From Octopus sinensis (Eukaryota), in contig NC_043018.1 of the NCBI RefSeq assembly GCF_006345805.1, positions 7,812,001 through 7,876,000 on the forward strand: a DNA stretch of 64,000 nt, read 5' to 3'. Below, piece by piece: positions 8,633 to 58,152 of this stretch; the stretch's first letter is position 1, and each line of letters starts with the position of its first letter. Position numbers and translations under genes: made by a program. The notes beneath the pieces were generated by a model. It saw only the letters and a program-made list of their open reading frames with translations. It did not search any database and was not told the origin of the DNA.

Positions 8633-8888
8633 TTATTCCTCAAGGTTTGTAATTTTAAACACCCACGCCCAGTCACAGGGTAAGCTCGATATAGGGATGT
8701 TGGGTAGGTCAATTTTAAGCCCAGTCGTAGCATAGTAACTGTATGTAAATGTATTTGGATAACCAAGCATGCGGACAACTGTTCTCGATGTTGGTTTTGC
8801 AGCTCCAAGGATGAGCATGTTATTGTTTGGCCAAAGCAACGTAGTAGCATACACGACTTTTGTGTTGTTCTCCATTTTACTGGTGTAC
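8633..8888 (-). CDS. FUCA: Alpha-L-fucosidase (GH29) copy B, exon 8 (last coding exon)
   Basis: ag|G TAC ACC AGT...: YTSKMENNTKVVYATTLLWP...LPCDWAWVFKITNLEE*; 256 bp, acceptor at 8889-8890. Confidence 0.95.
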
Positions 8889-16008: not shown

Positions 16009-16179
16009 CAAACTTTCTTTGTATATGTGTCGTTCTGGTGGGTCCAAGGTTTGCTGCCATAGATGGCCTCTCCATTGACTTTGAGCCACTGACCAACTTG
16101 GAGCAATCTCTCTTCAAACAGTGGATCGATACGTCCATCATGAGTGGGTCCAATGTTCATTAGAAGGTTTCCTCCACAG
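16009..16179 (-). CDS. FUCA: Alpha-L-fucosidase copy B, exon 7
   Basis: ttag|C TGT GGA GGA AAC...: [57 protein letters not shown] |gtaag; 171 bp. Confidence 0.96.
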
Positions 16180-18446: not shown

Positions 18447-18579
18447 CTGATGGTCTCAACTAGTAGAGATATCAGCCCTTCGATGGTATAATAGTCAGAG
18501 TAGCGAGCACGGCGCCGGTAGCCCCAGGAATATTTATCAATAGTCATGGCATTCTCCCATTTGTGATTTATCAATTTAC
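18447..18579 (-). CDS. FUCA: Alpha-L-fucosidase copy B, exon 6
   Basis: ccag|GT AAA TTG...: [44 protein letters not shown] |gttgg; 133 bp. Confidence 0.96.
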
Positions 18580-20649: not shown

Positions 20650-20747
20650 CAGGGTTATATCTATCTTGGCAAGTGTAAAAGTCTCCATGGTGACATGAAA
20701 TTCCAATTCCCCATCGGTCATTGACCACAACAGTGTCTTTCACTGGA
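20650..20747 (-). CDS. FUCA: Alpha-L-fucosidase copy B, exon 5
   Basis: ccag|T CCA GTG...: [33 protein letters not shown] |gtgag; 98 bp. Confidence 0.96.
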
Positions 20748-22446: not shown

Positions 22447-22580
22447 CTGTCATTATAGAGCCATGCAATAAACTCTGTTGAATTCCAGTATTTATCTGGC
22501 GCTTCCCAATCACCATCTGACCAAATTACATCAGGTTTGTAATTCATAACCAGTTCATACAACTCAGGCATTGTTTTCTT
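22447..22580 (-). CDS. FUCA: Alpha-L-fucosidase copy B, exon 4 (catalytic nucleophile WSD)
   Basis: ttag|AAG AAA ACA ATG: [45 protein letters not shown] |gtagg; 134 bp. Confidence 0.97.
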
Positions 22581-24786: not shown

Positions 24787-24914
24787 CATGACAAAGTTTT
24801 GGGTTTTAAAACCGTTGGCTTTATCTTGCAGATAAAGAGGGTGGAACCATTCAAAGAGAGAATGGTACAAACCAAAATGTACAGGTGTCTTCCTGATGGC
24901 AGCTGCAAGTTCAC
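24787..24914 (-). CDS. FUCA: Alpha-L-fucosidase copy B, exon 3
   Basis: ttcag|GT GAA CTT...: [42 protein letters not shown] |gtaag; 128 bp. Confidence 0.96.
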
Positions 24915-25348: not shown

Positions 25349-25455
25349 CAACAAGGTCTCGTTTTGGCCCCACATCTTTTGAGTTCCAATTCCAGGAGTA
25401 TTTAGATGGCCAGTTGGTGAATCCTTCATGGTGTTTGCTTGTTAGAACAACATAC
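25349..25455 (-). CDS. FUCA: Alpha-L-fucosidase copy B, exon 2
   Basis: ttag|G TAT GTT...: [36 protein letters not shown] |gttag; 107 bp. Confidence 0.97.
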
Positions 25456-28104: not shown

Positions 28105-29010
28105 GAGGTCCAAATTGAGGTCGATCAACATCAGGGCCTCCGTGCAGGTGACACGTAAAAGTACCATCCGTTCGTAGCCGTTCGCCAGCCCTGTCTGGCC
28201 CCCGTGTAGGTGGCACGTAAAAGCACCATCCGTTCGTGTTCGTTGCCAGCCTGGCCTGGCCCCCGTGCCGGTGACACGTAAAAGTACCATCCGTTTGTGG
28301 CCGTTTGCCAGCTCTGTCTGGCCCCCGTGCCGGTGACACGTAAAAGCACCATCCGTTCGTGGCCGTTTGCCAGCTCTGTCTGGCCCCCGTGCCGGTGACA
28401 CGTAAAAGCACCATCCGTTCGTGGCCATTTGCCAGCCCTGTCTGGCCCCCATGTCGGTGACATGTAAAAGCACCATCCGTTCGTGGCCGTTGCCAGCCTC
28501 GCCTGGCCCCCGTGCCGGTGACACGTAAAAGCACCATCCATTCGTGGCCGTTTGCCAGCCCTGTCTGGCCCCCATGTCGGTGGCATGTAAAAGCACCATC
28601 CGTTCGTGCCCGTTGCCAGCCTCGCCTGGCCCCCGTGCCGGTGACACGTAAAAGCACCATCCGTTCGTGGCCGTTTGCCAGCTCTGTCTGCCCCCGTGTT
28701 GGTGGCACGTAAAAGCACCATCCGTTCGTGTCCGTTGCCAGCCTCGCCTGGCCCCCGTGCCGGTGACACGTAAAAGCACCATCCGTTCGTGCCGTTTGCC
28801 AGCTCTGTCTGGCACCTGTGCAGGTGGCACGTAAAAAGCACCCACTACACTCACGGAGTGGTTGGCGTTAGGAAGGGCATCCAGCCGTAGAAACACTGCC
28901 AGATCTGACTGGGCCTGATGAAGCCTTCCAGCTTCACAGACCCCAGTTGAACCGTCCAACCCATGCTAGCACGGAGAATGGACGCTAAATGATGATGATG
29001 ATGATGATGA
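28105..29010 (+). mobile_element. RTE 3' end carrying an expanded tandem array
   Basis: Ends ggacgctaaatgatgatgatg; array at 28140-28850. Confidence 0.85.
28140..28850 (+). repeat. Minisatellite, 11 full units of 61-62 bp plus a terminal partial unit
   Basis: Unit gtgccggtgacacgtaaaagcaccatccgttcgtggccgtt(t)gccagc(tctgtc|ctcgcc)tggcccc. Confidence 0.95.
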
Positions 29011-34140: not shown

Positions 34141-34568
34141 CTGGCACCGGATTTGGTAAATATTTCTGCCCACTGGTTTGGGTTGAAGAACTCTGTGGTG
34201 AACATCGGAGCAAAATCCTGGTAGGTGAAGTCTGGCCTGTAATTGTCCTTCATAAATTCCATACAAACTGGGTCCCGAACCCCATCAAGATCCCACCAGA
34301 ACCACTCAGAGCGAAAGCTGGGCACAGAAAACACACCCCAATGTAGGAAGATGCCGATTTTGGCCTCGTCGTACCATTTTGGTATGGGACGTGTGTCAAG
34401 AGATTTCCAATCGGGTTTGTATGGACCGCTAGAGATGCCTGTCCGAAATGCTGCAACGCCCCAGGGTAAACTTGTTGAAGATAGTAAAAGAACCAGGAAT
34501 AATGTCGATGACGGCCACCAAACAGACACATTTAACTCCGAAACCATCTTCTTTGTTATGGCTTGCAT
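34141..34568 (-). CDS. FUCA: Alpha-L-fucosidase copy B, first exon 1b (signal peptide + N-terminal catalytic region)
   Basis: ...[18 protein letters not shown]...[39 protein letters not shown]...SGAR, donor GCC AG|gttgt, phase 2; 428 bp. The start could also be the second Met (MVSEL). Confidence 0.93.
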
Positions 34569-34812
34569 TCAAAATCGAGGTTTATATTGCCGGTATAGTA
34601 TTAGCTATAACAGTAATTAATAAACAGTAACTGATCAACAATTAATCTTTAGTTAAAATGATTTGTGAGTGATCACAAAAATAGACGGGAAAAGCAGAAG
34701 CAAACACATGACTACTGCTGCCCCTGCTGCAACTGACCACCACTGCTGCTGCTGCTGCCGCTACTATGTATTTATATACTTAACTATATCTTGCTATTAT
34801 TGTCCCTACTGC

Positions 34813-34953
34813 GGATCTTTTCGGTTTGACCGGCAGTTTTTTAAAATAATTTCTATGTAAATAAAAAATATCAAACTTCGTATACTGGTAGAATCTGTTT
34901 ATAAAACATCTTTTTCTCTTGGCTTTATTAAGAAAATTCTGTAAAAAAGATCC
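34813..34953. mobile_element. Merlin-like MITE, internally deleted
   Basis: Begins ggatcttttcggtttgaccggcag, ends aaaaaagatcc; flanks CCTACTGC / GCTACTGC (7 of 8). Confidence 0.7.
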
Positions 34954-34995
34954 GCTACTGCAGCAACGAACTCTGCTATTAATATATTTTTTCTT

Positions 34996-35235
34996 GGATC
35001 TTTTCCTTTTGAACGGCACTTTGTAACATAATTTCTAGGTAACTAAAAAGTTTTAAACTTCGATTCATTGGTTAAAATTCGAAAAATTAAACTACGTTAA
35101 ACGAACGAATTACAATTTTATCAAGAAAGCCAAGAGAGAAAAAAATGTTTTATTTTGACACATTCTACCAGTATACGAAGTTTAAAAGTGTTTTAGTTAA
35201 CTAGAAATTGTGTGCCGTTCAAAAGGAAAAGATCC
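34996..35235. mobile_element. Merlin-like MITE
   Basis: TIR ggatcttttccttttgaacggcac / gtgccgttcaaaaggaaaagatcc; flanks TTTTTCTT / CTTTTCTT (7 of 8). Confidence 0.75.
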
Positions 35236-35964
35236 CTTTTCTTTGTAACACACGCCCACACGGCCTAGAATTTTGGAGGAAGACGAATTTTCCACTAAAT
35301 CGACTCCAGTACTTGACTGATACTTTATGTTATGATGCCACCACCACCACGAGAGATGTGAAAGGTAAAGTCACGTTCGGTGTCATTACAGGTGTGTGAA
35401 GCAAAGTCATGCTCAGTGTCAATAACACTTTATGTACCTTATAACAACATTTTCAGGTCGTGCAATTTACAGAAATTATTGCAAGCTACCACTGAGCTAA
35501 ATTAAAATAACTACTAATCAACTACATCATTTAAATCGAGCCAGTGCCCTTTCATATTCCACCGTTTCATAACTTTTGATTTTTCTTACGAATCTTCGAC
35601 ATTTATTAGATATTTTAAAGATTTGGCTTTAATTTTTTCTGTTTCCTTTCTTACACTTCCTTAATTTATATAACTTTCCGATCGAAAGTTTACCGGTTCG
35701 TTGCATAAGCTTATCTCTATGACAACACCGGCAACGGGGCTTTTTGATTGGTTAAAATTACATTAATTTAAATGTTTGAAACTTCTTCATTATTTATTTC
35801 TAAAAAAAAAATTAGTTTAATGCAATTTCCGTCATCAGCATTTTTTGAAAATAATCTGCTGACAATTTGTAAAACTTCACCTCTTCCTACAATTATTTCC
35901 TTTCTTCACGTTCTCTCTCCGTCCTGATATTAACTGTATCTTATTCAATTCCTATATCTAAATC

Positions 35965-36371
35965 GGATCTTTTCGGTTTGAACGGCAGTTTTTTAAAATA
36001 ATTTCCACGTAACTAAGCACTTTTAAACTTCGTATACTGGTAGAATGTGTTTATAAAACATCTTTTTCTCTTGGCTTTCTGAAGAAAATTCTATAGTTTG
36101 TAAGATATTTGTTGTTTTTTTTCTGCAATTTCAACCAATCAATGACGTCCATTGAGGTAAAAAAAAAAACATTCTGTGCCGTATGAATATGTCCCTCGTT
36201 TAAGAAACAGATTGGGTTTATTTACATTTGTGAAGAAAAAAAATACCCTTCCCCCCAACCCTAACCCTAAAACAGATTGAAATGCAATAGATCGATACTA
36301 GGGTCATAATTATGGGTGACAATTTCATATGACACTACTAGAAAAAACTGCCGTTCAAACCAAAAAGACCC
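35965..36371. mobile_element. Merlin-like MITE with perfect 8-bp target-site duplication
   Basis: 29-bp TIRs (27 of 29 match) starting GG; TCTAAATC at 35957-35964 and 36372-36379. Confidence 0.85.
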
Positions 36372-36594
36372 TCTAAATCATCTATCATACCCTTTTCCCT
36401 CCAGTATACTTATGTGCAATCTACCCACTCGTTTTTTCTGTTCCTCCAACCCATGACCTTTGGGGACCCATATAAGATTTCATTGTTAAAGCTTATGAGC
36501 AATAATTTGATTATGCTTTTAGAAATATACACAAAATATTTTAACAGCTTGAAGTACAATTCCTAAAATATTTAATTATATGAATATCATATCT

Positions 36595-36810
36595 GTTAAG
36601 ACCTACCAAAAACTGAGCAAGTATAAAGATCTTGAAATAGAAATTAGCAAAATGTGGAACGTGAAGACTAAAACAATACCTGTTGTCATAGGTGCCCTAG
36701 GAATGATAACAAAAGAGGCTGATTGCTACCTAGCTCAGATATAAGGAAACCCCAGAATGGCAGAAATTCAAAAGATAGTGCTCATGGGAACTGCCCATAT
36801 CCTACGTAAT
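36595..36810 (+). mobile_element. R4/Dong-clade LINE 3' fragment
   Basis: KLSKYKDLEIEISKMWNVKTKTIPVVIGALG...IQKIVLMGTAHILR. Confidence 0.8.
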
Positions 36811-36933
36811 CTCAATGTAACTGGAATGAAAAAGCTGACAAACCCATGGTCATAGTTATGGCTCACTCCTGAACAAGAGATATCAACATACAATCTTTCT
36901 GAGAAATGTGATAGGTGTAGGAGTGGCTGTGTG

Positions 36934-37545
36934 CGTGCCAAGCTGTCAAGGCACGGAAGTGCTGTCTCGCCATGTCTGCGATGTGAGCAGGATAGGGAAA
37001 CCATCTTGCACACATTCATGGAGTGCCTGGAGTTATCGGGACTGATTGCTTTTGCCGAACAACTGTTGTCAGTGAGTGGAAGAGTACAGCTATCAGCAGA
37101 GACTATCATTGAGATTGTGCCACATCCTTTCCTCAGCAAGGAAGGCTTGTTTTTCTTGCGTAGTAGCCATACTGAAAGAAACAGTATGGCAGACGCGTAC
37201 GAAAGGTATAGTGACAGGTACCTTTGTATCCGGCCAGGGGTTGGTTAATTTTTTAGTTACCACCTCAGTAGTAAGATCAGGCCGGAGAAGAGGTGTCTGT
37301 CACGAGATATGTTTGTGAAAAGATGGAAGCCTGTAGCTTGCAAGCTGGGTATATTTGGCACCAGGTAAGTGTGGCCGGATCAAGAAGTAAAGGTTCTACC
37401 CAGATGGCTGGGTTCCTTGCCCTACTGTGTAATATTAAATTTGTAAACTTTATATTGTAAATACTAAAACGTTTTAAGCTACTTCACCCTATATGTTTGT
37501 ATGTCCCCTCTATGTAACGCCTTAATGGCGAATTTTCATGAAATA
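36934..37545 (+). mobile_element. L1/Tx1-clade LINE 3' fragment inserted in an OK SINE head
   Basis: CLRCEQDRETILHTFMEC zinc knuckle; SINE stops at gagtggctgtgtg (36933) and resumes aagtagcttgcttacc (~37545). Confidence 0.75.
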
Positions 37546-38419
37546 AAGTAGCTTGCTTACCAACCACATGGTTCTGAGTTCAGTCCCACTACGTGGCACT
37601 TTAGGCAAGTGTCTTCTACTATAGTCTTGGGCCAACCAAAGCCTTGTGAGTGGATTTGGTATGTGTTTGTCCCCCCAACATCGCTTGACAACCGATGCTG
37701 GTGTGTCTATGTCTCCATAACTTAGCGGTTCAGCAAAAGAGATCGATAGAATAAGTATTAGGCTTACAAAGAATAAGTCCTGTGGTCAATTTGCTCGACT
37801 AAAGGCGGTGCTCCAGCACGGCCACAGTCAAATGACTGAAACAAGTAAAAGAGTAATAATAATAACATAGGTACATAGGTTACAAGAACAGACACATATG
37901 GAGACACGGATCCACACATATAAAGATGCACATCCATACATACAAACAAGGTACATAGATGCATAACACACACACACACACACAGACATGCACACACAAG
38001 GAGACAGAGGTGCATACATATACAAACACACGCTCACACACACACATACATAGAAAATACACAAACACGGACGGGCAAGCACATAAAGATGCAGGATGCG
38101 TACTTACAGATGCACACACATACATACATATATACATACATGCATGTATAGGCACACACACACTGACCCACACACATGCGCACAAACAAACAAAAGGGAA
38201 CGCAGTGTAAATAAGGGACAGAGTCAAGACTATTGAAAAGGTTGCAAGACGCAACGAAAGTTTTGGGAAAATAAAAATAAGAAATAAGTGGAAATTTTAC
38301 CGGTGAGTGTGTTAAATTATAAGGCACTAAAAGAAAATGACCCTCCCCAGACACAACAGAATATGCTTCAACACACAAACTCATATAAAGAATCTTGCAA
38401 ACCAAATCCCCAAAACGAA

Positions 38420-38870
38420 AAACAACAATAACATTGAAACTCCGATGTCTGGCAGCTGACTTGGCAGACACCCATAAAATTATCAACCATCTTACAAACA
38501 ATAACTCTGAGCACCTTTTCAAACTCCACCCGTCTAACACCCGTGGACATGTTTACAAAGTCAGAAAACAGCACAGCTCCCATTACTTTCAGAAACATTT
38601 TTTCACGCTGAGAGTTGCTGAAGTATGGAACAAACTGCCGGCATCAGTTGTTAGTTGTCGGAGCACTGCATCCTTCAAAACTTCCATGCTTTCTGAGATT
38701 CGCCAACACTACACCTGATTTTCTCCCCTCCATACACACACAAGCATGTATCTGACTCATACATTGTTCGCTTCCCAGACATTTGTACATTACTGCATAT
38801 GCTTTATACGCACTTTTTGACAAGTTGTGGTGCACCTGAGCACTGCATAAAATAATTTCATTATTATTAT
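38420..38870 (+). mobile_element. CR1 LINE 3' end
   Basis: LKLRCLAADLADTHKIINHL...HFFTLRVAEVWNKLPASVVSC; (ATT)n tail. Confidence 0.9.
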
Positions 38871-38916
38871 AAAGTTTTTTTTTATAAATCCTTAAAGGAA
38901 AAAAAAAAAAACTCAC

Positions 38917-39287
38917 TGTGCCCCAGAAGCTCCAAATGTATTTGCCCAGACATCAGGGTTGAAGAATTCAGCAGTAAACCTTGGTGCAAAGTCAGCATAG
39001 GTGAAGTCAGGTCGGTAGTTTTTGTTCATGAAATCAATATAAGCAGGAATTTTTTTACCTTGCCAGTTCCACCAAAACCATTCTGAACCATAACTTGGCA
39101 CAGAAAACACCCCCCAGTGAAGGAAGATACCAATCTTGGCGTCATCATACCATTTTGGTATTGGTCGAGTGTCCAAAGAAGTCCAATTGGGGGAGTAACG
39201 CAATTGTCTAGATCCATGTGAGCCCTTCTGGAAAGAAACCAAAACAGCAAGTAAAAGGAGAGCAAGAATTGTCTTGGAGATTCTCAT
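38917..39287 (-). CDS. FUCA: Alpha-L-fucosidase first exon 1a (signal peptide + N-terminal catalytic region), no body of its own
   Basis: [25 protein letters not shown]...[39 protein letters not shown]...SGAQ, donor GCA CA|gtgagt, phase 2; 371 bp, no stops. Confidence 0.92.
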
Positions 39288-39779
39288 GATTCTTTGGTTT
39301 GGTTTGATTTGATTTGTATTTCTTTTGGAAGCACAAAAGTGGAATTGTTTAGTTTGTTTAGCTAAATGGTTGCTTGCTTTCTCTGTCTAAAGTCTGTCTC
39401 TTCCCAACTATCTCTATATATATATATGTGTGTGTGCGCATGTGTGAGTGTGTGTGCACGTGTGTATATGTGCTCACATGCATGTGTGTACCATGTCAAA
39501 ATATTACCCCTTCCTCTATACACTTTGACACAAATACCTGTTTCTCTAATGATAAACAAAATTGTTTCATTTCATTTGTTGTTTTAATTGTTGTTGTTGT
39601 TGATGTTTTGGTCTTTGCCCCAAAATGTAAAAATAGAAGCCACATGATGTTAGATTTTTGTTTATTTTGGTCCAACTTGACACAATTTATCTGTGGTGAG
39701 GGGTGGCCATGGCCATGTTAAAGCTTGTCTTCCATTGGCAGCAAGCTCAATTTATCAGATATGGTTTAAGAGGGTTAAA

Positions 39780-47080: not shown

Positions 47081-47336
47081 TTATTCCTCAAGGTTTGTAA
47101 TTTTAAACACCCATGCCCAGTCACATGGTAAGCTCGATATAGGGATGTTGGGTAGGTCAATTTGAAACCCAGTCGTAGCATAGTAACTGTATCCAATTGG
47201 CTTTGGATAACCAAGCATGTGGACAACTGTTCTTGACGTTGGTTTTACAGCTCCAAGGATGACAATATTAGTATTTGGCCAAAACAACATCGCAGCATAC
47301 ACGACTTTTGTGTTGTTCTCCATTTTACTGGTGTAC
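47081..47336 (-). CDS. FUCA: Alpha-L-fucosidase copy A, exon 8 (last coding exon)
   Basis: ag|G TAC ACC AGT: YTSKMENNTKVVYAAMLFWP...LPCDWAWVFKITNLEE*; 256 bp. Confidence 0.95.
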
Positions 47337-48005
47337 CTGGAGGGGAGAGAAATGGTAAAACAAGAAAACCAGATAATGGCATGGAGCAATGATCTATTCA
47401 TACATATATGCATATGTATATAGTTTACAGAGAAGAAAGTAAATTTTGAATGCAGTAAAGCTGTAAGAACAGCAGAGGAAGATTGAGTATTTACCCCTTA
47501 TAAAAAAGAGAAAAAAAGTTGCTAGCAGGCAGTTATGGGAGTCGAACCTGTATCCCTCAGATACTAGCTGAGAGCTTCTACCATTAAGCCAAATGACCCT
47601 TGACAAGAATTACCACCAATTTTTAATGCTAAATTACAGTTTTTTTTAAATGTGACAACATTTTATAACAAACTTTGCAAGCGTCGAATGTGGGTGGTGA
47701 TGTAGACAGACAGATAGACACACCCTGTATACATGCATACACACACATGCAGAGATATGCAGATACCTATATGCACACTCATACACATATACATACATAG
47801 ACGCCAAGTAAACTATTTGTGAAGTGATCCAAACAAGGGAGTCACTACATTGGTGATTGATGTTCTAGAAATAGTAGCCAAATGTATCTACTTTCTTATA
47901 AAAAATGAAGGGCACATTGGTAAATGTTTTTCAAGGTACACGATGTCAGCAACAACATCTGAAATATTTCAGACAAACGAAGATAATGGAAGCAAATATT
48001 CTTAC

Positions 48006-48176
48006 CAAACTTTCTTTGTATATGTGTCGTTCTGGTAGGTCCAAGGTCTGCTGGCATAGATGGCCTCTCCATTGACTTTGAGCCACTGACCAACTTGGAG
48101 CAATCTCTCTTCAAACAGCGGATCAATCCGTCCATCATGGGTGGGTCCAACGTTCATTAGAAGGTTTCCTCCGCAA
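48006..48176 (-). CDS. FUCA: Alpha-L-fucosidase copy A, exon 7
   Basis: [57 protein letters not shown]; ttag / gtaag; 171 bp. Confidence 0.96.
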
Positions 48177-48269
48177 CTAAGAATCAATTAATTGATACAA
48201 TCAATCAGCAATAACAGCATTAGTAAGTAAAGTACCAGTAATAATAATAATAATAATAATAAGGGGTTG

Positions 48270-48375
48270 ATCGCTACCTAACTCAGATACCAGGAAACCC
48301 CAAAATGGCAGAAATTCAAAAGATAGTGCTCATGGGAACTGCTCATATCCTACGCAAAATACTTTCTATGTAATC
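48270..48375 (+). mobile_element. R4/Dong 3' end next to (AAT)n
   Basis: PGNPKMAEIQKIVLMGTAHILRKILSM*. Confidence 0.75.
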
Positions 48376-48649
48376 TCAAGGTTTAAAACAAACATAATTT
48401 TCGTTTTTTTTTTTTTAGACATTCACTAGTACAACACTAAATACAAAACCAAATATATGGCACCCTAGGCATAACAACATCACAAACTTCCAACCTGTTG
48501 TCTCTTGAGGTCTCTAGGTGAGACTTGGAGCCAACTTGTACAAATATAAAGCAAAAGTCAAACATAGAATAATAATAATATGTAGGATTAAAAACAAAAC
48601 CTGGCAAAGCGCAGAGGAACTTAAAAGAGTCAATGGCCATTCCGAAAAC

Positions 48650-49130
48650 AGGTAGACAGAACTTGTGAGCCTTGGTTGGCAGTCTGTCAAGGAGAAGGAA
48701 TACTCTGATTTAAAAATTAGGGTAGATAGGACTCCTTAGTCACAGTGGCGACAACCTGTCTCCTGACAGTCAAGCCTGGCTCCTTCACGAAATGAACAAA
48801 AGTGTGAGAAAAGACGAGTATCTGGCACTTCCAAATAACCAGTGCTCTGGGTAGGCTGCACTCATTAGCCTAGGAGAAGGAATACTCCAAGCCCCAAACC
48901 AGGGGAGCAAGGACCCTGCCGCTTTGGCAGACTACCTTATTGGTCTATACAGGTGGGTGGGTTAGGGGTAACATTGCTTACAGCAATGATTTAAACCACC
49001 TTGAACTAACCTTACAGCCAGATGAACTAGGTCAAGGCAGGTCATGTACGGAAGTGTGCACTGTTGCAGCTTGTTACTGCATCCACCAATCCTTGATCGC
49101 TTCAAGCAAGAACGTAGAACAACAAACTAA
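48650..49130 (+). repeat. Interspersed repeat, possibly a LINE 5' region
   Basis: Two ggagaaggaatactc motifs; 48836-49058 recurs at 52946-53167. Confidence 0.45.
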
Positions 49131-49144
49131 AATCTTGTTTTTTT

Positions 49145-49435
49145 AAGTGGCCGTTGCCAGCCTCGCCTGGCCCCCGTGCCGGTGGCACGTAAAAAGCACC
49201 GTCCGATCATGGCCGTTTGCCAGCCTCATCTGGCACCTGTGCCAGTGGCACGTAAAAAGCACCCACTACACTCACAGAGTGGTTGGCGTTGGGAAGGGCA
49301 TCCAGCCATAGAAACATTGCCAGATCAGACTGGAGCCTGGTGCAGCCTTCTGGCTTCCCAGACCCCAGTTGAACCGTCCAACCCATGCTAGCATGGAAAG
49401 CGGACGCTAAACGATGATGATGATGATGATGATGA
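49145..49435 (+). mobile_element. RTE 3' end ((GAT)n tail)
   Basis: gtgccggtggcacgtaaaaagcacc...ggacgctaaacgatgatg. Confidence 0.85.
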
Positions 49436-49666
49436 AACACAAGGCTTTTAATAACGGTGGTGGGAATAGCTGATTAAATCAACCCCAGTGCTTAACTGGT
49501 ACTTTAATTCCTTTCACCCTTGAAACTGATGTAAAATAAACTGTATTTGAATTCAAAAGAAACAGGGTATATAACAGACTAGTGTTAGGCATTCTGAGTG
49601 ATCCCCCCACAAATCTTTCAATCCACAAAAATACAATAAAAGATACCAAACAAAGTTAGTACTAAC

Positions 49667-49799
49667 CTGACAGTCTCAACCAGTAGAGATATCAGCCCTT
49701 CAATGGAATAATAGTCAGAGTAGCGAGCACGGCGCCGGTAGCCCCAGGAATGCTTATCAATAGTCATGGCATTCTCCCATTTGTGATTTACCAATTTAC
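49667..49799 (-). CDS. FUCA: Alpha-L-fucosidase copy A, exon 6
   Basis: [44 protein letters not shown]; ccag / gttag; 133 bp. Confidence 0.96.
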
Positions 49800-50624
49800 C
49801 TGGATGAACAACATTTGGAAGAAGAAAAAGGTTTACTGATAATTATCTCCAGATCAATGTAAATTAATGTATCTTCTCTTTTTTGTGATGATACATTGGG
49901 GTTTAAAGCAGACTTGTTCAAGGAACTGGGCTGAGGCATCTTCCATTGGCTCACCACTGGTAGGGTAGTTTTAGTAGGGTATATGTGGGTGTGGTATTGT
50001 TGTGGTGGTGTCAGCATTTATATATGGCATGAAATAATAAATGGAGGATAATGAAATTATTTAAACCTTTTTTTAACTCTGAAATCTTGTTTTAAGCTTT
50101 AAGTAGAAAACATGAGGTTAACAATCAGAATAATGTATTTTCTTTTTCATCAGTTTTCTCTCTTCAATTTTGGAGAAGATTAAGTTAAGCCAAGCTCATG
50201 TCACAGCTTACCTCTTCAACACTGAAGATCAAATTTTGTCAGCTTATTATCGTCAACAATAAAGATTGACTCAATTAGAGTTCATGTCAGTTTATTTCTT
50301 CGATTTTGGGGGGTGAAAGCAAGTTCATGTCAAACAGATCGATTCAAACTGAATGCATGTCACAGTTTATTTCGTCAGCTTTGAACCGATAACTGATGTG
50401 CAGTGATCCTGTTATACACGGCCTCAAATCTACACAGGATCCCACACACATCAGTTGTAGTTAATAACATCTGATGCTGGGTCACAATTACTACAGTTGT
50501 AGTAATTTCCAACAGGCTGGTATCATATACAGAAAAAGATTGGTCTCTCACCTGCTTAAATGTCTCACAAAATGCTGTTATATACCTGCCCTGGAAACCA
50601 TGTTGCTTAAAGAATTAACCTTAA

Positions 50625-50844
50625 CCCTTTAGTGTTCGCATTATTCTGCCAAAATTAATACTTTTTCATCTACATTGTTTTGAGTAAATCTGCTTTATCT
50701 TGTAGCTTTGAGATTTTGATGAGGTAGCTGTTAATTTTTAAAATGATATTGTAGGGTTGGTGTGAGAGACCAGATATGGCCAGTTTGAACATAAAACAGG
50801 CAGAATATTTTTGGCTGGATATGGCCAGTTTAAATGCTAAAGGG
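50625..50844. mobile_element. piggyBac-type MITE, copy-A-specific
   Basis: TTAA|CCCTTTAG ... CTAAAGGG|TTAA; absent at the matching point of copy B intron 5. Confidence 0.85.
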
Positions 50845-50952
50845 TTAAAAACTTTTTCAAGCACCATCTCACCATTTTAACAGACAAAAACATGTTCCAA
50901 GTAGCATATAACTATCTTTCTATATATCTATCATTTGGTATTTTGTACTCAC

Positions 50953-51050
50953 CAGGATTATATCTATCATGGCATGTGTAAAAGTCTCCATGGTGACAAG
51001 AAATTCCAGCTCCCCATCGGTCATTTACCACAACAGTGTCTTTCACTGGA
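50953..51050 (-). CDS. FUCA: Alpha-L-fucosidase copy A, exon 5
   Basis: [33 protein letters not shown]; ccag / gtgag; 98 bp. Confidence 0.96.
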
Positions 51051-52291
51051 CTGGAAGAGAAAGACAGAGAAATGGAAGAAAATTTAAGATCGTTAAAGGT
51101 ATTTTAGATATCAAAGAATCACGTAAAAGAAGATGCACTTGAGAGGTAGGGAATGGTTCAATTAAGGTGGAAGCAGGGATGGTGGTGGAATAGAGCAAGA
51201 GAGAAAGATGAGGGTGAATTAGAGGCAGGGTGGATAGAAACGGGGGTGGGGTTTAGCTAGAGAGTGAAAGAAGATTAAAGAAAGAGGAGAGAATTAAAAA
51301 GGAATTTCAGAATCAATGAGTGAGGTAAGAATTCGGTTAAAAATATTTAATTCGAAATACATACAGAAATTATTTTCACTTTCAGGACAAAAATATTATG
51401 CCAATGTTGTCATGGAAATAAGAAAAAAATTTCCTGAAATTTCTATAAAACCTAGAATTTCCCACTGCATATTGTTTATCCCATCACACCAAAAACAGGT
51501 TACATTCCTCGCAATTCCAAACAATTCTAAGCACTCAATAATCCTTGAATGTGGAATCAAATCATAAGCTTTCCGATAATCAATCCATCATTTTCCGATA
51601 TGGATGTTTATGTTTAAATTTACAGATAACAACACTCTATTCACAACAAACAAACCTTAACAACTACAATTCAACAATTTCAAATAATTAATCCCCAGGT
51701 TGGCCCATACAACTATGCATACATTTTTTTAATAATACCTTTACCCATACCCTTACATATATTTTTTAATAATAATAATAATAATAATAATATTAAAATT
51801 GTCTTGGTACAAAAGATGGGCTACAGCAAATATTCTGCTCAATACCACAGATTTGCTTGTCAGTTGTTTGACCTTAACCAGTTGAGCATGTCCCTTAGTG
51901 GCTGGCGATATGTGCATCTCTGATCGTGAGCAGAAGTAGTGAGGGAGCGTCATAACCATGTGTTGAGAGAGATTCTTTGGGGTTTGAATAATTCACCTCA
52001 GGAAATTTGGGTGTTTCGTTCAACGTCCTTAAACAACCCTTATTCAAGGACCTTTTGAGTGGGATGGGTTACTCGACCAGAAGATAATTCTAACTGGGCC
52101 CCACCTGCAAGGTCATATGCTGTTTATCTTGATATGAGATCACCATGTCATGCACATATGGTTGTGATGCATGTGCCTAGTTTGCCCTTATCAGATGGGT
52201 AGTCATGATGGGTATACTGGGCTTCGTATATTTTACCCCAGTGTCACTTTGATGGCATGCGCTGCTCTCTCACTCAATAATAATAATAATG

Positions 52292-52336
<45 letters not shown>

Positions 52337-52609
52337 GTTTCAGATTTAGCCACAAGGGCAGCAATTTTTGGTGGGAGGGGATGGGTCGATTACATCAACC
52401 TCAGTGTTTTACTGGTATTTATTTTATTGACCCTGAAAGGATGAAAGGCAAAGTCAACCTTGCAGGAATAATAATGATGATGATGATGATAATGGTGGTG
52501 GTGGTGGATTGATCATCGCAAAGCTTATGATATGATTCCACATTCAAGGATCCAAGATTCTTGGATGATTCCACATTCAAGGATTCAAGAATATGATTCC
52601 ACATTCAAA

Positions 52610-55315
52610 TGCTTAGATTTGCTTGGAATTGCAAGGAATGTAACCTGATTTTCTGAAGAGAAGTATGGTGGGGTGGAAAACTGAGCTGACAGCCTATGGA
52701 CATAGTTTGGGCACCCTGGGTATCAGGAGAGGGATTTTCCAAGGCAATGGCTTATCTCCGTTGCTTTTTGTTCTCTGCATGATCCTGCTGAGCTTGGTAC
52801 TTAGGAAAATGAACCTGAGATATAAGCTAAAGGGAAAACCTCAATCAACCAACCACATCCTCTTCATGGATGATTTGAAGCTGTATGGCAAAATGAGTTC
52901 TTTGGTGAACACAGTTCACAGTTTTAGTACTGATATTAGAACAGATAACCAGTGCTCTGGGTAGGCTGTACTAATTAGCCTAGGAGAAGGAATACTCCAA
53001 GCCCCAAACCAGGGGAGCAAGGACCCTGCCGCCCTAGCAGACTACCCTATTGGTCTATATAGGTGGGTGGGTTAGGGGTAACATTGCTTACAGCAAGGAT
53101 TTAAACCACCTTGAACTAACCTTACAGCCAGATGAACTAGGTCAAGGCAGGTCATGTACGGAAGTGTAGTGGAATGAAGTGTAGTGGAATGTACCTGAAA
53201 AGAGGCAAGGTACAGTCCCTAGCAGGGACAGAATTAGAGAACTGATTAAGCAAATTGAAGTGGAAGGCTACAAATGTCTTGGCATTCAAGAATTCAATGA
53301 GATAATGGGAAAGGAAATGAAAGAACAACTTTGAATGGAATATTTCTGGTACAGTCCCTGGCAGGGATAGAATTACCTAATAGAGAACTGATTAAACAAA
53401 TTGAAATGGAAGGCTGCAGATCTCTTGGTATACTGCAGTTCAATGAAATCATGGAGAAGGAAATGAAAGAAAAATTGTGGACGGAATATTTCTGAAGACT
53501 AAGATTAGTTTTTGCACTCCAAACTGACCAGATGGAATAAAATCCAGACAGTGAATACATGGGTGATAGCATCACTTTGGAATGAAAATGGAATTGTCAA
53601 CTAGCAAAAAAAACAAAAAAACTGATGAACATGGATATGAAGATGAGAAAAATATTGACAATGCACAGAGCCTTCCACCCTGTGAGTGACACCAATGGGC
53701 TGTACTTGTCCAGAAGAAAGGGTGAGAGAGGTTAGATCAGTTGTCAGGACTGTATCGAAGCAGAGGAAAACAGCTTAGAGTGGTATGTAAAAAATACTGT
53801 GGAACCATTGCTGAAATATGTGAAGAAGTCCAGTATCATCAAAATTGATAATTGTGTAAAGAAAGAAAAATTTAAAGAGGAAAAAGACACAAAAATGAAA
53901 CATGGAAGGAGAAAAAAAACACGTGGTCAGTTTGCAAAAGATATGAAGACAGATACAGAAGATCAGTGGCTGTGGAAGAGGAGGAGTGACCTGAATATAG
54001 AGACAGAAGTACTTATATGTGCAGCTCAAGAACAAGCGTTAAGGACTAACTATGTGAAGTGCAGAATCAACAACACTACTGACAGCAACAAATACAGAAT
54101 GTGTGGTGAGAGGGGTGAAATGGTATGGCACATCGTTAGCAAATGCCTGAAATTGGCACAATGCGATTACAAAAGACGATATGACAATGTAGCAAGGATG
54201 ACCCATTGGGGAAATCACAGCCAACAAAGAGTAAAGATATGGTATGAGAAAACCCCAGAAGGAGTTGCCAAGAATGTAGATTGCAAAGTGAGACATGGTT
54301 ATGGTTGCAGAAAGGAATGCTGAAAAGGGAGACAGAAACTTTGTTAGTAGCAGCACAAGATCAAGCATTAAGAACTAATTGGATAAAAGTTAAGATAGAC
54401 AAAAACCATGTAGATTCCCAATATAGAATGAAGATCCTGTGGGATGCAATGATTCAGAGTGATCACCTGACCAGACATCAGAAACTGGATATTGTGGTGA
54501 ATGAAAAAGAAAGAACATGCATGATAATCGACATAGCATGTCTTGGTGACACAGGATCAAAGAGAAAGAAGAAGAAAAACTAAACAAATGTGATGATTTG
54601 AAGTGGGGAAATATGAAGGTTGTGTTCAATGAGGAAAGTAGACGTGATGTCTGTAGTAATTAGCATGTTTGGAAGTATCGGCATTCAACTACCAGCATGG
54701 CTCAAAAAGACTGGAACTCCTAGAAAAATCAGCATTGCTTGGAATTGCAAGAATTCTTCACATAGGTGCAGGAGTGGCAGTGTGGTAAGTAGCTTGCTTA
54801 CCAACCACATGGTTCTGGGTTCAGTCCCACTGCGTGGCACCTTGGGCAAGTGTCTTCTACTATAGCTTCGGCCCGACCAAAGCCTTGTGAGTAGATTTGG
54901 TAGATGGAAATTGAAAGAAGCCCGTCGCATATACGTATATATGTATGTGTGTATGTTTGTGTGTCTGTGTTTGTCCCCCCAACATCGCTTGACAACTGAT
55001 GCTGGTGTGTTTACATCCCCGTAACTTAACAGTTTGGCAAAAGAGATCGATAGAATAAGTACTAGGCTTACGAAGAATAAGTCCTAGGGTCGATTTGCTT
55101 GACTAAAGGCGGTACTCCAGCATGGCCACAGTCAAATGACTGAAACAAGTAAAAGAGTAAAGAGCAAGTTTCTTGAAGCATGACCAGTATACAAGTGTCA
55201 CCTTAGTCTGCTTGTTGGGAACAGCTGACACTTTCAATCGTACCCTGCAAAATAAGCTGTGAGTTTTCATCAAACAGTAGCAGCAGCAGTGCCAACAGCA
55301 ACAACAACAACAACA
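52610..55315 (+). mobile_element. R4/Dong-clade LINE 1 (RT, zinc knuckle, restriction-like endonuclease), decayed, with nested SINE 54765-55160
   Basis: GIFQGNGLSPLLF...NHILFMDDLKLYG; AAQEQALRTN...RMCGERGEMVWHIVSKC; ILWD...KLDIVV...IIDIAC; (CAA)n tail. Confidence 0.9.
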
Positions 55316-57360
55316 ATTAGCTAAATGGTCCGAAGCTAGTGAAGGTTGTAAATACTTGGGCAGTATCATTACTTAGATACTCAGCAGCTTTTGTAGATTG
55401 GACAAAAACTGAATTAGCAAAGCTAGACAGAAGAACTAGGAAGGAATTCGATATAAAATGAGGACTCCACCTAAGAGCAGGAGTATCAAGATTATACTTA
55501 CCTAGAAAGGAAGGCAGAAGAGGGTTAATATCAGTAGAAGACTGCGTGGAGTTATCTAGAGTAGATATAGACTCCTGTGTAGGAAATATTGAAGAAAGTT
55601 TATTAAAAGCTGCTAGAATCACAGCAAGACTTAGAGAAACCAAAAACCCAAACAAAGTTAAAAACCAGAAGAAAGAACAGAAATTATCTGATGGCAGGAG
55701 AAGGCATTGTATGGTAGATTCCCAAATACAGTTGCAGCAAATAGTAGTTAGTGAGACATGGTTATGGTTGCAGAAATGAATGCTGAAAAGGGAGACAGAA
55801 AGTTTGTTAGTAGCAGCACAAGATCAAGCATTAAGAACTAATTGGATAAAAGTTAAGATAGACAAAAACCATGTAGATTCCCAATGTAGAATGAAGATCC
55901 TGTGGGATGCAATGATTCAGAGTGATCACCTGACCAGACATCAGAAACTGGATATTGTGGTGAATGAAAAAGAAAGAACATGCATGATAATCGACATAGC
56001 ATGTCTTGGTGACACAGGATCAAAGAGAAAGAAGAAGAAAAACTAAACAAATGTGATGATTTGAAGTGAGAAATACGAAGGTTGTGTTCAATGAGGAGAG
56101 TAGATGTGATGTCAGAAGTAATTAGCATGTTTGGAAGTATCAGCATTCAACTACCAACATGGCTCAAAAAGACAGGAACAAATGTAAAGATAGAACTCCT
56201 AGAAAAATCAGCATTGCTTGGAATTGCAAGAATTCTTCACATAGGTGCAGGAGTGGCAGTGTGGTAAGTAGCTTGCTTACCAACCACATGGTTCTGGGTT
56301 CAGTCCCACTGCGTGGCACCTTGGGCAAGTGTCTTCTACTATAGCTTCGGCCCGACCAAAGCCTTGTGAGTAGATTTGGTAGATGGAAATTGAAAGAAGC
56401 CCGTCGCATATACGTATATATGTATGTGTGTATGTTTGTGTGTCTGTGTTTGTCCCCCCAACATCGCTTGACAACTGATGCTGGTGTGTTTACATCCCCG
56501 TAACTTAACAGTTTGGCAAAAGAGATCGATAGAATAAGTACTAGGCTTACGAAGAATAAGTCCTAGGGTCGATTTGCTTGACTAAAGGCGGTACTCCAGC
56601 ATGGCCACAGTCAAATGACTGAAACAAGTAAAAGAGTAAAGAGCAAGTTTCTTGAAGCATGACCAGTATACAAGTGTCACCTTAGTCTGCTTGTTGGGAA
56701 CAGCTGACACTTTCAATCGTACCCTGCAAAATAAGCTGTGAGTTTTCATCAAACAGGAGCAGCAGCAGTGCCAACAGCAACAACAACAACAACAATTAGC
56801 TAAATGGTCCGAAGCTAGTGAAGGTTGTAAATACTTGGGCAGTATCATTACTTAGATACTCAGCAGCTTTTGTAGATTGGACAAAAACTGAATTAGCAAA
56901 GCTAGACAGAAGAACTAGGAAGGAATTCGATATAAAATGAGGACTCCACCTAAGAGCAGGAGTATCAAGATTATACTTACCTAGAAAGGAAGGCAGAAGA
57001 GGGTTAATATCAGTAGAAGACTGCATGGAGTTAGCTAGAGTAGATATAGACTCCTGTGTAGGAAATATTGAAGAAAGTTTATTAAAAGCTGCTAGAATTA
57101 CAGCAAGACTTAGGGAAACCAAAAACCCAAAGTTAAAAACCAGAAGAAAGAACAGAAATTATCTGATGGCAGGAGAAGGCATTGTATGGTAGATTCCCAA
57201 ATACAGTTGCAGCAAATAGTAGTTAGTGAGACATGGTTATGGTTGAAGAAATGAATGCTGAAAAGGGAGACAGAAACTTTGTTAGTAGCAGCACAAGATC
57301 AAGCATTAAGAACTAATTGGATATAAGTTAAGATAGACAAAAACCATGTAGATTCCCAAT
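54288..57360 (+). repeat. ~1.47-kb tandem duplication (two copies plus a 140-bp third start)
   Basis: gtgagacatggttatggttg at 54288, 55751 and 57226 (periods 1463 and 1475 bp). Confidence 0.95.
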
Positions 57361-58005
57361 GTGGGTTATGCAAATCAAAAGAGGAAAGTGTTACTCATAT
57401 AGTAAGTGAATGTAGCATGCTGGCACAGAAAGAATGCTAGAAAATAGATGACAATCTAGGGAGAGTAATCCACTGGGAGTTATGTAGAAAGCTAGGATTT
57501 GAACATACTGATAAATGGTATGAACATGAACCTAGCAAAGTACTAGAAAGTAAGAAATACAAGAAATTGTGGGGCTTTAACATTCAGATTGATAGAGTGA
57601 TAGAGTAATAGAAGCTAGAAGGCCTGATTTAGTAGTAGTAGATAAAGAGAATAGAAAGTGTCAGATAATTAACTTTACAGTCTCAAATGATGAAAAAATA
57701 GCAAAGTCCCTGGACCTAGCCACTGAATTACAGAGATTATGAAAAGTGCAGGCAAAATGTATCCCAGTAGTTATAGGTACATTGGGAAGTATCCTTAAAG
57801 ATTTGAGCAGATGGACAGAGGAAATAGGCATAAAAGCCAGTTTAGTACAGCTCCAAAAAACAGTGTCATTTGGGACAGTTAGGATACTAAGGAGGGTTCT
57901 TGGTGTCTAAGGTTACTTGTTGTAGCCTGATGTTAGGAATTCTTCTTTTCCAACAGTTTAATCTGTAGTGTGTATAATAACAACAACAACAATAATAATA
58001 ATAAT
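55317..58005 (+). mobile_element. R4/Dong-clade LINE 2, 5'-truncated, partly duplicated
   Basis: LYLPRKEGRRGL; CGLCKSKEESVTHIVSEC; EARRPDLVVVDKENRKCQII; IPVVIGTLG...RILRRVLGV*; (AAC/AAT)n tail. Confidence 0.9.
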
Positions 58006-58018
58006 AAATAATAAAAAC

Positions 58019-58152
58019 CTGTCATTATAGAGCCATGCAATAAACTCTGTTGAATTCCAGTATTTATCTGATGCGTGCCCTTCACCATCTGACCAAATTA
58101 CATCAGGTTTGTAATTCATAACCAGTTCATACAACTCAGGCATAGTTTTCTC
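58019..58152 (-). CDS. FUCA: Alpha-L-fucosidase copy A, exon 4 (nucleophile WSD); exons 1-3 lie beyond the window
   Basis: ttag|GAG AAA ACT ATG: [45 protein letters not shown] |gtttt; 134 bp. Confidence 0.96.

What the first reader, a model, noticed from the sequence alone, without database searches (positions are those of the whole stretch)
34141..39287. Two intact alternative first exons feeding one fucosidase body (variable exon / constant body architecture)
Seen: exon 1a (38917-39287) and exon 1b (34141-34568) each encode their own signal peptide plus the N-terminal ~94 aa of the GH29 domain. Each ends in a phase-2 GT donor and joins in frame to the only exon 2 I can find (25349-25455), giving 465 or 484 aa. 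No other FUCA exon is visible between them. They are 66/94 (70%) identical, whereas exons 4-8 of copies A and B are 234/263 (89%) identical. In the 24 codons PIPKWY..SVPS there are 11 synonymous changes and 1 replacement, so both exons look to be under purifying selection rather than one being a dead orphan. Established: UGT1A and clustered protocadherin loci use promoter choice among variable first exons spliced to shared exons; vertebrate FUCA1/2 have a single first exon. Inference: two promoters produce two enzymes with different N-termini and possibly different targeting or specificity from one body.
Basis: partly seen in the sequence, partly recalled or inferred. Interest (0 to 1): 0.85.

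Follow-up and report, generated by a model that had tools for sequence, protein, structure and literature searches.

The report
Octopus fucosidase gene, two first exons
One Octopus sinensis alpha-L-fucosidase gene has two homologous start exons that can each join the same seven downstream exons; the layout is real, shared with other octopods and already in RefSeq as isoforms X1 and X2, so it is a tidy example of a known gene design rather than a discovery.

Summary
On the minus strand, exon 1a (39287-38917) and exon 1b (34568-34141) each carry an ATG, a signal-peptide-like leader and about 94 residues of the GH29 domain. Each ends in a phase-2 GT donor and reads in frame into the only exon 2 (25455-25349). 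The products are 465 and 484 aa.

No exon 2-8 remnants lie between the two first exons.

The window is Octopus sinensis chromosome CM016880.1. RefSeq already lists both products as isoforms X2 (XP_029649578.1) and X1 (XP_029649577.1) of one gene.

The 1a-1b-body order recurs in O. bimaculoides and O. vulgaris. Argonauta hians has three intact first exons before one body. The 1a and 1b lineages are older than the Argonauta/Octopus split.

Ortholog dN/dS for the GH29 part is 0.18 for 1a and 0.26 for 1b. Exon 1b also shows gene conversion with the neighbouring paralog.

An octopus RNA contig shows a 1a-type exon spliced to a full body.

Caveats:
- I saw no junction reads from this species.
- The O. 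vulgaris assembly has a 1-bp deletion in exon 1a.
- Any functional difference between the two enzymes is untested.

Verdict: a new member of a known kind (UGT1A-like variable first exons), of moderate interest.

The parts
38917..39287 (-). Exon 1a (distal first exon). It holds the ATG, a 25-residue signal-peptide-like leader and GH29 residues up to ...GASGA. The donor is CA|GTGAGT, phase 2.
   Evidence: The protein built from it is identical to XP_029649578.1. Ortholog dN/dS is 0.18.
39288..39397 (-). 5'UTR and promoter-proximal stretch of exon 1a.
   Evidence: The 5'UTR of RNA contig L001 (nt 10-110) aligns collinearly with this stretch (77% identity over the whole alignment, which runs on into the coding leader), with no splice. 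The region is conserved in O. bimaculoides and O. vulgaris.
34141..34568 (-). Exon 1b (proximal first exon). It holds the ATG (a second ATG at codon 8 has a better context), a long leader and GH29 residues up to ...TKSGA. The donor is AG|GTTGTT, phase 2.
   Evidence: The protein built from it is identical to XP_029649577.1. The same donor occurs in every 1b-type exon of three species.
34569..34810 (-). Sequence upstream of exon 1b. It is conserved among the three Octopus species and unlike the upstream region of the paralog beyond about 35 bp. It is the candidate 1b promoter and has a TATA-like AATATAAAC.
25349..25455 (-). Exon 2, the only one in the window. It is the shared acceptor for 1a and 1b and encodes [12 protein letters not shown]...
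24787..24914 (-). Exon 3 (shared).
22447..22580 (-). Exon 4 (shared). It holds the nucleophile Asp in the motif IWSDGDW.
20650..20747 (-). Exon 5 (shared). It holds the acid/base Asp in the motif CQDRY.
18447..18579 (-). Exon 6 (shared).
16009..16179 (-). Exon 7 (shared).
8633..8888 (-). Exon 8 (shared). It encodes the C-terminal beta-sandwich domain and includes the stop codon.
47081..58152 (-). Exons 4-8 of the upstream tandem paralog (XP_029649645.1): 58152-58019, 51050-50953, 49799-49667, 48176-48006 and 47336-47081. Its exons 1-3 lie beyond the window end. Its single first exon is of the 1b type.

Best explanation
This is one GH29 alpha-L-fucosidase gene of Octopus sinensis with two tandem, homologous, protein-coding first exons and one set of constant exons 2-8.

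How it works. Transcription that starts upstream of 1a gives a pre-mRNA whose only usable first donor is that of 1a. That donor is spliced over 13.5 kb, skipping 1b, to exon 2 and yields the 465-aa enzyme. I take 1b to have no usable acceptor: each first exon has its own ATG and leader, but acceptor strength upstream of 1b was only looked at by eye, not scored. Transcription that starts just upstream of 1b uses the 1b donor and yields the 484-aa enzyme (or 477 aa if translation starts at the second ATG).

What differs between the two enzymes. They share both catalytic Asp residues (exons 4 and 5) and the C-terminal domain. They differ in the signal peptide and in 28 of the first 94 domain residues. 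The fucose-binding HWG and SEW motifs are kept. The stretch right after SEWFWW is recoded: [16 protein letters not shown] in 1a versus [16 protein letters not shown] in 1b.

History. The arrangement is old. 1a-type and 1b-type exons were already distinct before Argonauta and Octopus separated. Argonauta keeps three first exons before one body. In Octopus, 1b-type-plus-body units were also copied into separate genes, and these still exchange sequence with exon 1b by gene conversion.

Shown: the anatomy, reading frames, synteny, selection, identity to the RefSeq isoforms, and a spliced 1a-type mRNA in another octopus.

Inferred: separate promoters, use of both forms in O. sinensis, and any difference in regulation or enzyme properties.
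For: - Anatomy and frames.
- Single body.
- Window is 100% identical to CM016880.1 over 26,920 bases.
- Both products equal RefSeq X1 and X2, and the annotated gene starts at the 1a ATG.
- An independent O. vulgaris annotation uses 1b joined to exon 2.
- Synteny in O. bimaculoides, with both exons intact.
- Argonauta has three intact first exons, each with an ATG, a leader and a phase-2 donor, before one body.
- Exon-1 tree: the 1b clade includes the Argonauta copies (80-100% support within it, 97% with the outgroup cephalopod). The 1a clade includes an Argonauta copy (64-99%). dS between 1a and 1b is saturated.
- Ortholog dN/dS for the GH29 part: 1a 0.18 (p = 0.0006), 1b 0.26 (p = 0.016).
- The odd donor AG|GTTGTT is the native donor of all 1b-type exons, including genes that have only that first exon.
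- RNA contig from the octopus metatranscriptome SRR3401912: 1a-type exon spliced to the body, with the 5'UTR collinear with the genome.
Against: - I saw no RNA evidence from O. sinensis itself. A RefSeq isoform model can rest partly on protein alignments.
- Exon 1a has a 1-bp deletion in an A5 run in the O. vulgaris assembly, and that annotation lacks the 1a form.
- Exon 1b is being homogenised with exon 1 of the upstream paralog. Inside the exon, 13 sites group by species against 3 by orthology; in the 3' flanking intron it is 6 orthology to 0. So its low dN/dS may be borrowed from the paralog.
- 1b differs from O. vulgaris at an intron-like rate: 15 of 428 bases, against 4 of 1027 in exons 2-8.
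- No transcription start site was mapped for 1b.
Confidence: 0.75

Rival explanations
1. Exon 1a is a relic. It was the first exon of an older gene arrangement and is no longer used productively in the O. sinensis/O. vulgaris lineage. The working gene is 1b plus exons 2-8, and isoform X2 is an annotation product of protein homology.
For: - A 1-bp deletion in exon 1a in the O. vulgaris assembly puts its donor out of phase.
- The O. vulgaris annotation lists only the 1b form.
- The 1a form needs a 13.5-kb intron that contains another first exon.
- No RNA from this species was seen.
Against: - Ortholog dN/dS is 0.18 (p = 0.0006) for the GH29 part of 1a between O. sinensis and O. bimaculoides.
- The exon is intact in O. 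sinensis, O. bimaculoides and Argonauta.
- It has a strong GTGAGT/GTAAGT donor.
- 1a differs from O. vulgaris less than its flanking introns do.
- A 1a-type mRNA is expressed and spliced in another octopus.
- The deletion lies in a homopolymer, where long-read assemblies often err.
Confidence: 0.12
2. Exon 1b of this gene is the unused copy. The gene is really the 1a gene, and 1b is a duplicated first exon sitting in intron 1. It is kept looking intact by gene conversion from the functional first exon of the upstream paralog.
For: - Gene-conversion signature restricted to the exon.
- Paralogous exons group by species in the tree.
- The donor looks weak (GTTGTT).
- The leader shows dN/dS above 1.
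- Divergence from O. vulgaris is at an intron-like rate.
Against: - The same GTTGTT donor serves genes whose only first exon is of the 1b type.
- RefSeq X1 and the separate O. vulgaris annotation both join 1b to exon 2.
- The upstream 240 bp is conserved among three Octopus species and is distinct from the paralog's.
- Two residues specific to this gene's 1b (Asp in WWDLDG, Glu in MEFM/VEFM) persist in both species despite conversion.
- Argonauta keeps two 1b-type first exons in a single-copy gene.
Confidence: 0.08
3. The arrangement is an artefact: either a mis-assembly placed 1a here, or a degraded set of exons 2-8 was overlooked between 1a and 1b, so that these are two separate genes.
For: None was found. 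The only prompt is that the O. bimaculoides assembly shows no exons 2-3 for this gene.
Against: - The order U gene - 1a - 1b - body is the same in three independent Octopus assemblies.
- Argonauta shows the same design.
- Sensitive tblastn and blastn find no exon remnants in 25456-47080.
- The missing exons in O. bimaculoides coincide with runs of N: 2040 of 3489 bases.
Confidence: 0.02

Closest known systems
UGT1A locus (vertebrate UDP-glucuronosyltransferase 1 family)
   Same: It has tandem homologous first exons, each with its own start codon and leader. Each encodes the N-terminal part of the enzyme and is spliced to one shared set of downstream exons that carry the rest of the catalytic machinery. 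The number of first exons differs between lineages (two in Octopus, three in Argonauta).
   Different: There are only two or three cassettes here, not about nine to thirteen. The variable part is about 94 residues of a single (beta/alpha)8 barrel rather than a whole substrate-binding domain. The sugar-binding residues in the variable exon are unchanged. Promoter choice and different substrate preference are proven for UGT1A (established knowledge) and unproven here.
Clustered protocadherin alpha/gamma loci
   Same: Variable first exons are each spliced to constant exons. The upstream-most transcribed donor wins because variable exons lack acceptors.
   Different: Protocadherin variable exons encode the whole extracellular and transmembrane part, and promoter choice is stochastic per neuron. 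Nothing here suggests that. The family and function are unrelated.
Tandem duplicated exon substitution / mutually exclusive homologous exons (reviewed for human genes in PMC9741552)
   Same: The two exons arose by exon duplication and are homologous. They are used one at a time and have been kept for a long evolutionary time.
   Different: Those are mostly internal exons chosen by splicing. Here each copy has its own ATG, leader and, for 1a, a collinear 5'UTR. The choice is therefore most likely made at transcription start.
Vertebrate FUCA1 and FUCA2 (tissue and plasma fucosidase); human FucA1 structure 7PLS/7PM4 (PMC9548408)
   Same: The enzyme family and fold are the same: E = 3.7e-189 to 7PLS, with nucleophile and acid/base Asp conserved. 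Exon 1 covers the positions of the fucosidosis mutations G60D and S63L, which are conserved in both 1a and 1b.
   Different: Vertebrates obtain two enzymes from two separate genes with single first exons. Octopods obtain at least part of their diversity from alternative first exons on one body, plus extra tandem genes.

Membership tests
GH29 alpha-L-fucosidase (FUCA1-like) | Alpha_L_fucos (PF01120) catalytic domain plus Fucosidase_C (PF16757) above the curated cut-offs. | tested here: met
   Both isoforms score 456-458 bits for PF01120 and 85 bits for PF16757.
GH29 alpha-L-fucosidase (FUCA1-like) | Catalytic nucleophile Asp (human D225) and acid/base Asp (human D276) present. | tested here: met
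   The alignment to 7PLS puts Asp224 (IWSDGDW, exon 4) and Asp275 (CQDRY, exon 5) of the 465-aa form at those positions. Residue roles are from PMC9548408.
GH29 alpha-L-fucosidase (FUCA1-like) | Sugar-binding HWG and SEW motifs of strand 1 and the following loop present in each alternative exon. | tested here: met
   Both 1a and 1b read [18 protein letters not shown]. The role of these motifs is from established knowledge of GH29 structures.
GH29 alpha-L-fucosidase (FUCA1-like) | Fucosidase activity of each isoform. | not testable with these tools
   This needs expression and an enzyme assay.
Variable-first-exon / constant-body locus (UGT1A type) | Two or more tandem homologous first exons, each with its own start codon and leader. 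| tested here: met
   Argonauta has three.
Variable-first-exon / constant-body locus (UGT1A type) | Every variable exon ends in a donor of the same phase and reads in frame into one shared exon 2, with only one set of constant exons. | tested here: met
   The products equal RefSeq X1 and X2.
Variable-first-exon / constant-body locus (UGT1A type) | Each variable exon has its own promoter and transcription start. | tested here: inconclusive
   For 1a, the 5'UTR of an RNA contig from another octopus is collinear with the genome upstream of the ATG. For 1b there is only a conserved, paralog-distinct upstream block with a TATA-like motif. No start-site data are available.
Variable-first-exon / constant-body locus (UGT1A type) | Transcripts of each type observed in the same organism. 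| not testable with these tools
   Only annotation models are available for O. sinensis. There is one spliced 1a-type RNA contig from an unnamed octopus.
Mutually exclusive internal exons (splicing-chosen) | Both alternative exons are internal, each with an acceptor, downstream of a shared first exon. | tested here: not met
   Each exon has its own ATG and leader. The L001 5'UTR runs unspliced into 1a.
Orphan or decaying exon (pseudo-exon) | Disabling mutations or neutral evolution (dN/dS near 1). | tested here: not met
   dN/dS is 0.18 for 1a and 0.26 for 1b in the GH29 part. Both are intact in O. sinensis and O. bimaculoides. The exception is the 1-bp deletion in 1a in the O. vulgaris assembly.

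The most novel reading that the evidence does not exclude
Octopods have kept, since before the Argonauta/Octopus split, a small array of promoter-linked first-exon cassettes (two in Octopus, three in Argonauta). The cassettes swap the first strand-helix unit of a GH29 fucosidase barrel while the catalytic residues are shared. On this reading the recoded helix next to the sugar-binding loop gives the isoforms different substrate or pH preferences, not merely different expression. That would be a UGT1A-style diversification strategy in a glycoside hydrolase.
Probability: 0.3. Interest if true: 0.55.

Novelty: new member of a known kind. Interest (0 to 1): 0.35.

Why it matters
It shows that a lysosomal or secreted glycosidase can be diversified by alternative coding first exons rather than only by whole-gene duplication. 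It also shows that such an exon array can persist across a deep split within octopods.

In practice it explains three confusing database entries:
- an orphan 96-aa O. bimaculoides model (A0A0L8G9Q7);
- a partial 260-aa RefSeq model (XP_014782909.1);
- a chimeric UniProt model (A0A0L8GA35).

It also warns that exon-restricted gene conversion can mimic purifying selection in tandem families.

It does not open a long-standing question. The design is well known from UGT1A and the clustered protocadherins, and both isoforms are already in RefSeq.

Tried and rejected
1. Hidden exons 2-8 between 1a, 1b and exon 2. Sensitive tblastn (word size 2, E up to 10) and blastn (word size 7) gave only noise. 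Rejected.

2. Mis-assembly. Rejected by synteny in four assemblies.

3. Loss of exons 2-3 in O. bimaculoides. These turned out to be runs of N in the assembly. Rejected.

4. The GTTGTT donor of 1b as a sign of decay. It is the conserved donor of the whole 1b-type lineage. Rejected.

5. A duplicated promoter shared with the upstream paralog. Homology between the two genes starts only 15-35 bp upstream of the 1b ATG. Further upstream matches are dispersed repeats.

6. A 1a-type exon upstream of the two other O. sinensis paralogs. None lies within 10 kb.

7. O. bimaculoides exon-1a model A0A0L8G9Q7 as a handle for its locus. It was not on record. The locus was reached through two neighbouring models instead.

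8. Literature. No paper was found on octopus fucosidase isoforms or on these accession numbers.

9. Short-query protein searches. These returned only fragments of similar length. A full-length two-sequence profile was needed to find the annotated isoforms.

10. Structure prediction was not run. The tool returns no coordinates, so it could not show where the 28 differing residues sit.


Full report
**What is in the sequence**

All fucosidase-coding pieces lie on the minus strand.

- Exon 1a (39287-38917) translates to a 123-residue open segment starting with [17 protein letters not shown]....
- Exon 1b (34568-34141) translates to 142 residues starting with [29 protein letters not shown]....
- Both then run into the GH29 motifs [12 protein letters not shown] and SEWFWW.
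- Exon 1a ends CA|GTGAGT and exon 1b ends AG|GTTGTT, both in phase 2.
- Exon 2 begins at 25455 after an acceptor ...cgttag.

A tblastn of the whole window with 47 family members found exactly two exon-1 copies and one set of exons 2-8. It also found exons 4-8 of a second, upstream gene, which I call U. I fixed all exon borders by eye and by script. The two joined reading frames are open and give 465 and 484 residues.

**Is there a hidden second body, or a mis-assembly?**

No. Between U's stop codon (47081) and exon 2 (25455), a deliberately permissive tblastn with eight family members gave nothing better than E = 0.7. blastn with exons plus flanks matched only simple repeats.

The window is 100% identical, over the 26,920 bases I could compare, to Octopus sinensis chromosome CM016880.1.

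The order U gene - 1a - 1b - body is repeated in the independent assemblies of O. bimaculoides and O. vulgaris. In O. bimaculoides, exons 2-3 appear to be missing, but 2040 of the 3489 bases in that interval are N.

**It is already annotated**

A profile search with both full-length models returned two RefSeq proteins: XP_029649577.1, 'alpha-L-fucosidase-like isoform X1 [Octopus sinensis]' (484 aa), and XP_029649578.1, 'isoform X2' (465 aa). Their sequences are identical to my 1b and 1a models.

In the annotation held with the assembly, the gene downstream of U starts at the position of the exon 1a ATG.

The U gene is XP_029649645.1. Its single first exon is of the 1b type, and its exons 1-3 lie beyond the window end.

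A full-text search found no paper on octopus fucosidase isoforms or on these accessions.

**Comparative evidence that the design is old and maintained**

Argonauta hians has one fucosidase body preceded by three intact first exons. One is 1a-like (L002 10007-10395). Two are 1b-like (12071-12501 and 17853-18274). Each has an ATG, a hydrophobic leader and a phase-2 donor.

In a neighbour-joining tree of exon-1 peptides, the Octopus and Argonauta 1b-type exons form one clade (80% support; 97% with another cephalopod transcript included). The 1a-type exons of O. sinensis, O. bimaculoides, an RNA contig and Argonauta form another clade (99% without Argonauta, 64% with it). The bodies form a single octopod clade (100%).

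Synonymous sites between 1a and 1b are saturated. dN between them (0.31) exceeds dN between Octopus and Argonauta within each type (0.19 and 0.23). So the 1a/1b split predates the Argonauta/Octopus split.

**Selection, tested on orthologs rather than paralogs**

| Comparison (O. sinensis vs O. bimaculoides, GH29 part) | dN/dS | Synonymous | Replacement | p |
|---|---|---|---|---|
| Exon 1a | 0.18 | 11 | 9 | 0.0006 |
| Exon 1b | 0.26 | 7 | 8 | 0.016 |
| U first exon | 0.18 | 11 | 9 | 0.0005 |

The leaders of 1a and 1b evolve freely (dN/dS about 1.3); U's leader is less free (0.39).

There is a caution for 1b. Among the four sequences (this gene's 1b and U's exon 1, in each of the two species), 13 informative sites group the paralogs by species and 9 group them by orthology. 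Six of those nine lie in the 3' flanking intron. That pattern indicates gene conversion restricted to the exon. It also explains why 1b differs from O. vulgaris at 15 of 428 bases while exons 2-8 differ at 4 of 1027. The constraint seen on 1b may therefore be partly inherited from U.

**The weak-looking donor**

AG|GTTGTT is shared by every 1b-type exon examined. That includes U in two species and the distant paralog XP_029649350.1, both of which have no other first exon, and both Argonauta copies. It is the native donor of this lineage and not a sign of decay.

**Transcript evidence**

A 1542-nt contig from run SRR3401912 encodes a 465-aa protein made of a 1a-type exon joined to exons 2-8. 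[quoted passage not shown]

Its 5'UTR (nt 10-110) aligns collinearly with the O. sinensis genome directly upstream of the 1a ATG. So 1a behaves as a true first exon with a start site at least about 110 nt upstream.

For 1b, the 240 bp upstream are conserved in three Octopus species. They differ from U's upstream sequence beyond about 35 bp and contain AATATAAAC. I could not look at RNA from O. sinensis itself.

**How it most likely works**

The choice between two start sites decides which first exon heads the transcript. I take 1b to have no usable acceptor, so a transcript that starts at 1a can only join 1a to exon 2. This rests on each first exon having its own ATG and leader; I did not score acceptor strength upstream of 1b.

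Both products are complete GH29 enzymes and very close to human FucA1 (E = 3.7e-189 to 7PLS). The nucleophile Asp and the acid/base Asp are in shared exons 4 and 5 (residue roles from PMC9548408).

The variable exon supplies the signal peptide, strand 1 with HWG, the SEW loop and the first helix. The 28 differing residues concentrate right after SEWFWW and at the end of the exon. The 1b version is more acidic (14 Asp+Glu against 9).

Both leaders look like ordinary secretory signals, so different targeting is not favoured. Different regulation is the safest inference. Different enzyme properties are possible but untested.

**What speaks against**

- Exon 1a carries a 1-bp deletion in an A5 run in the O. 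vulgaris assembly. This puts its donor out of phase, and that annotation lists only the 1b form. It may be a homopolymer error or a real recent loss.
- RefSeq isoform models are not proof of expression.

**Comparison with known systems, and verdict**

The design matches the UGT1A type of locus: tandem coding first exons on a shared body. It matches in anatomy, reading frames and lineage-specific cassette number. Separate promoters and co-expression remain unproven here.

It is not a case of splicing-chosen internal exons.

I rate it a new member of a known kind. It is already captured by annotation and of moderate interest, mainly for its age, for the three-cassette version in Argonauta, and for the exon-restricted gene conversion.

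Noticed in passing
L002 10007-10395, 12071-12501, 17853-18274 (Argonauta hians BAAFZT010000065.1): Three intact fucosidase first exons (one 1a-type, two 1b-type with identical downstream flanks) precede a single set of exons 2-8. The gene lies between an SH2-domain gene and a Brix-domain gene.
   Followed up: partly
L006 about 5470-5480 (O. vulgaris OX597835.1), equivalent to window about 39024-39032: There is a 1-bp deletion (A5 to A4 in AACAAAAAC) in exon 1a of the O. vulgaris assembly. The frame stays open, but the donor ends up in the wrong phase. It is either an assembly error or a real loss.
   Followed up: partly
window 34141-34568, compared with L003 10001-10428, L004 6078-6505 and L005 10001-10428: Exon-restricted gene conversion occurs between exon 1b and exon 1 of the upstream paralog. 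There are 13 species-grouping sites inside the exon, while the 3' flanking intron groups by orthology (6 to 0). Two residues specific to this gene (Asp in WWDLDG, Glu in M/VEFM) survive in both species.
   Followed up: yes
L007 (O. sinensis CM016880.1 8579720-8619262): A third paralog (XP_029649350.1) lies about 700 kb away, next to a Brix-domain gene, as the Argonauta gene does. It has only a 1b-type first exon within 10 kb. The Argonauta gene may therefore be syntenic with this copy and not with the gene in the window.
   Followed up: partly
L004 6725-6927 and 7616-9452 (O. bimaculoides CM046622.1): Assembly gaps hide exons 2-3 of the orthologous gene. This explains the partial RefSeq model XP_014782909.1 (260 aa), the orphan exon-1a model A0A0L8G9Q7 (96 aa) and the chimeric model A0A0L8GA35, which joins the upstream gene's 5' end to this gene's exons 4-8.
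   Followed up: partly
window 34545-34568 and 34585-34595, minus strand: The first ATG of exon 1b has a poor context (T at -3). The ATG at codon 8 has a good one (AAGAAGATGG). A TATA-like AATATAAAC lies about 20 nt upstream of the first ATG. Some paralog models start at the second ATG, so the real product may be 477 aa.
   Followed up: no
window 58011-58018, minus strand: Exon 4 of the upstream paralog ends in the unusual donor AG|GTTTTT, where this gene has AG|GTAGGT. The RefSeq protein still uses it.
   Followed up: no
window 26371-27015 (-), 23225-23779 (+): There are transposon remains in introns: a reverse-transcriptase fragment (RVT_1, E = 9e-26) in intron 1, and an open frame with C2H2 zinc-finger matches in intron 3.
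   Followed up: partly
window 28135-28842 and 31129-31552: A GC-rich 62/123-bp minisatellite (11.5 copies) and a 133-bp repeat (3.2 copies) lie in the intron between exon 1b and exon 2. Related units occur in several introns of both fucosidase genes.
   Followed up: no
window 47525-47599, minus strand: There is a tRNA-Thr(AGT)-like sequence (Rfam tRNA 35.8 bits, also called by ARAGORN) in intron 7 of the upstream paralog. It could be a tRNA gene or a tRNA-derived repeat.
   Followed up: no
window 24960-25340, minus strand: Intron 2 is almost entirely CCT/CTT and CAT triplet microsatellite, which produces long spurious open frames.
   Followed up: no
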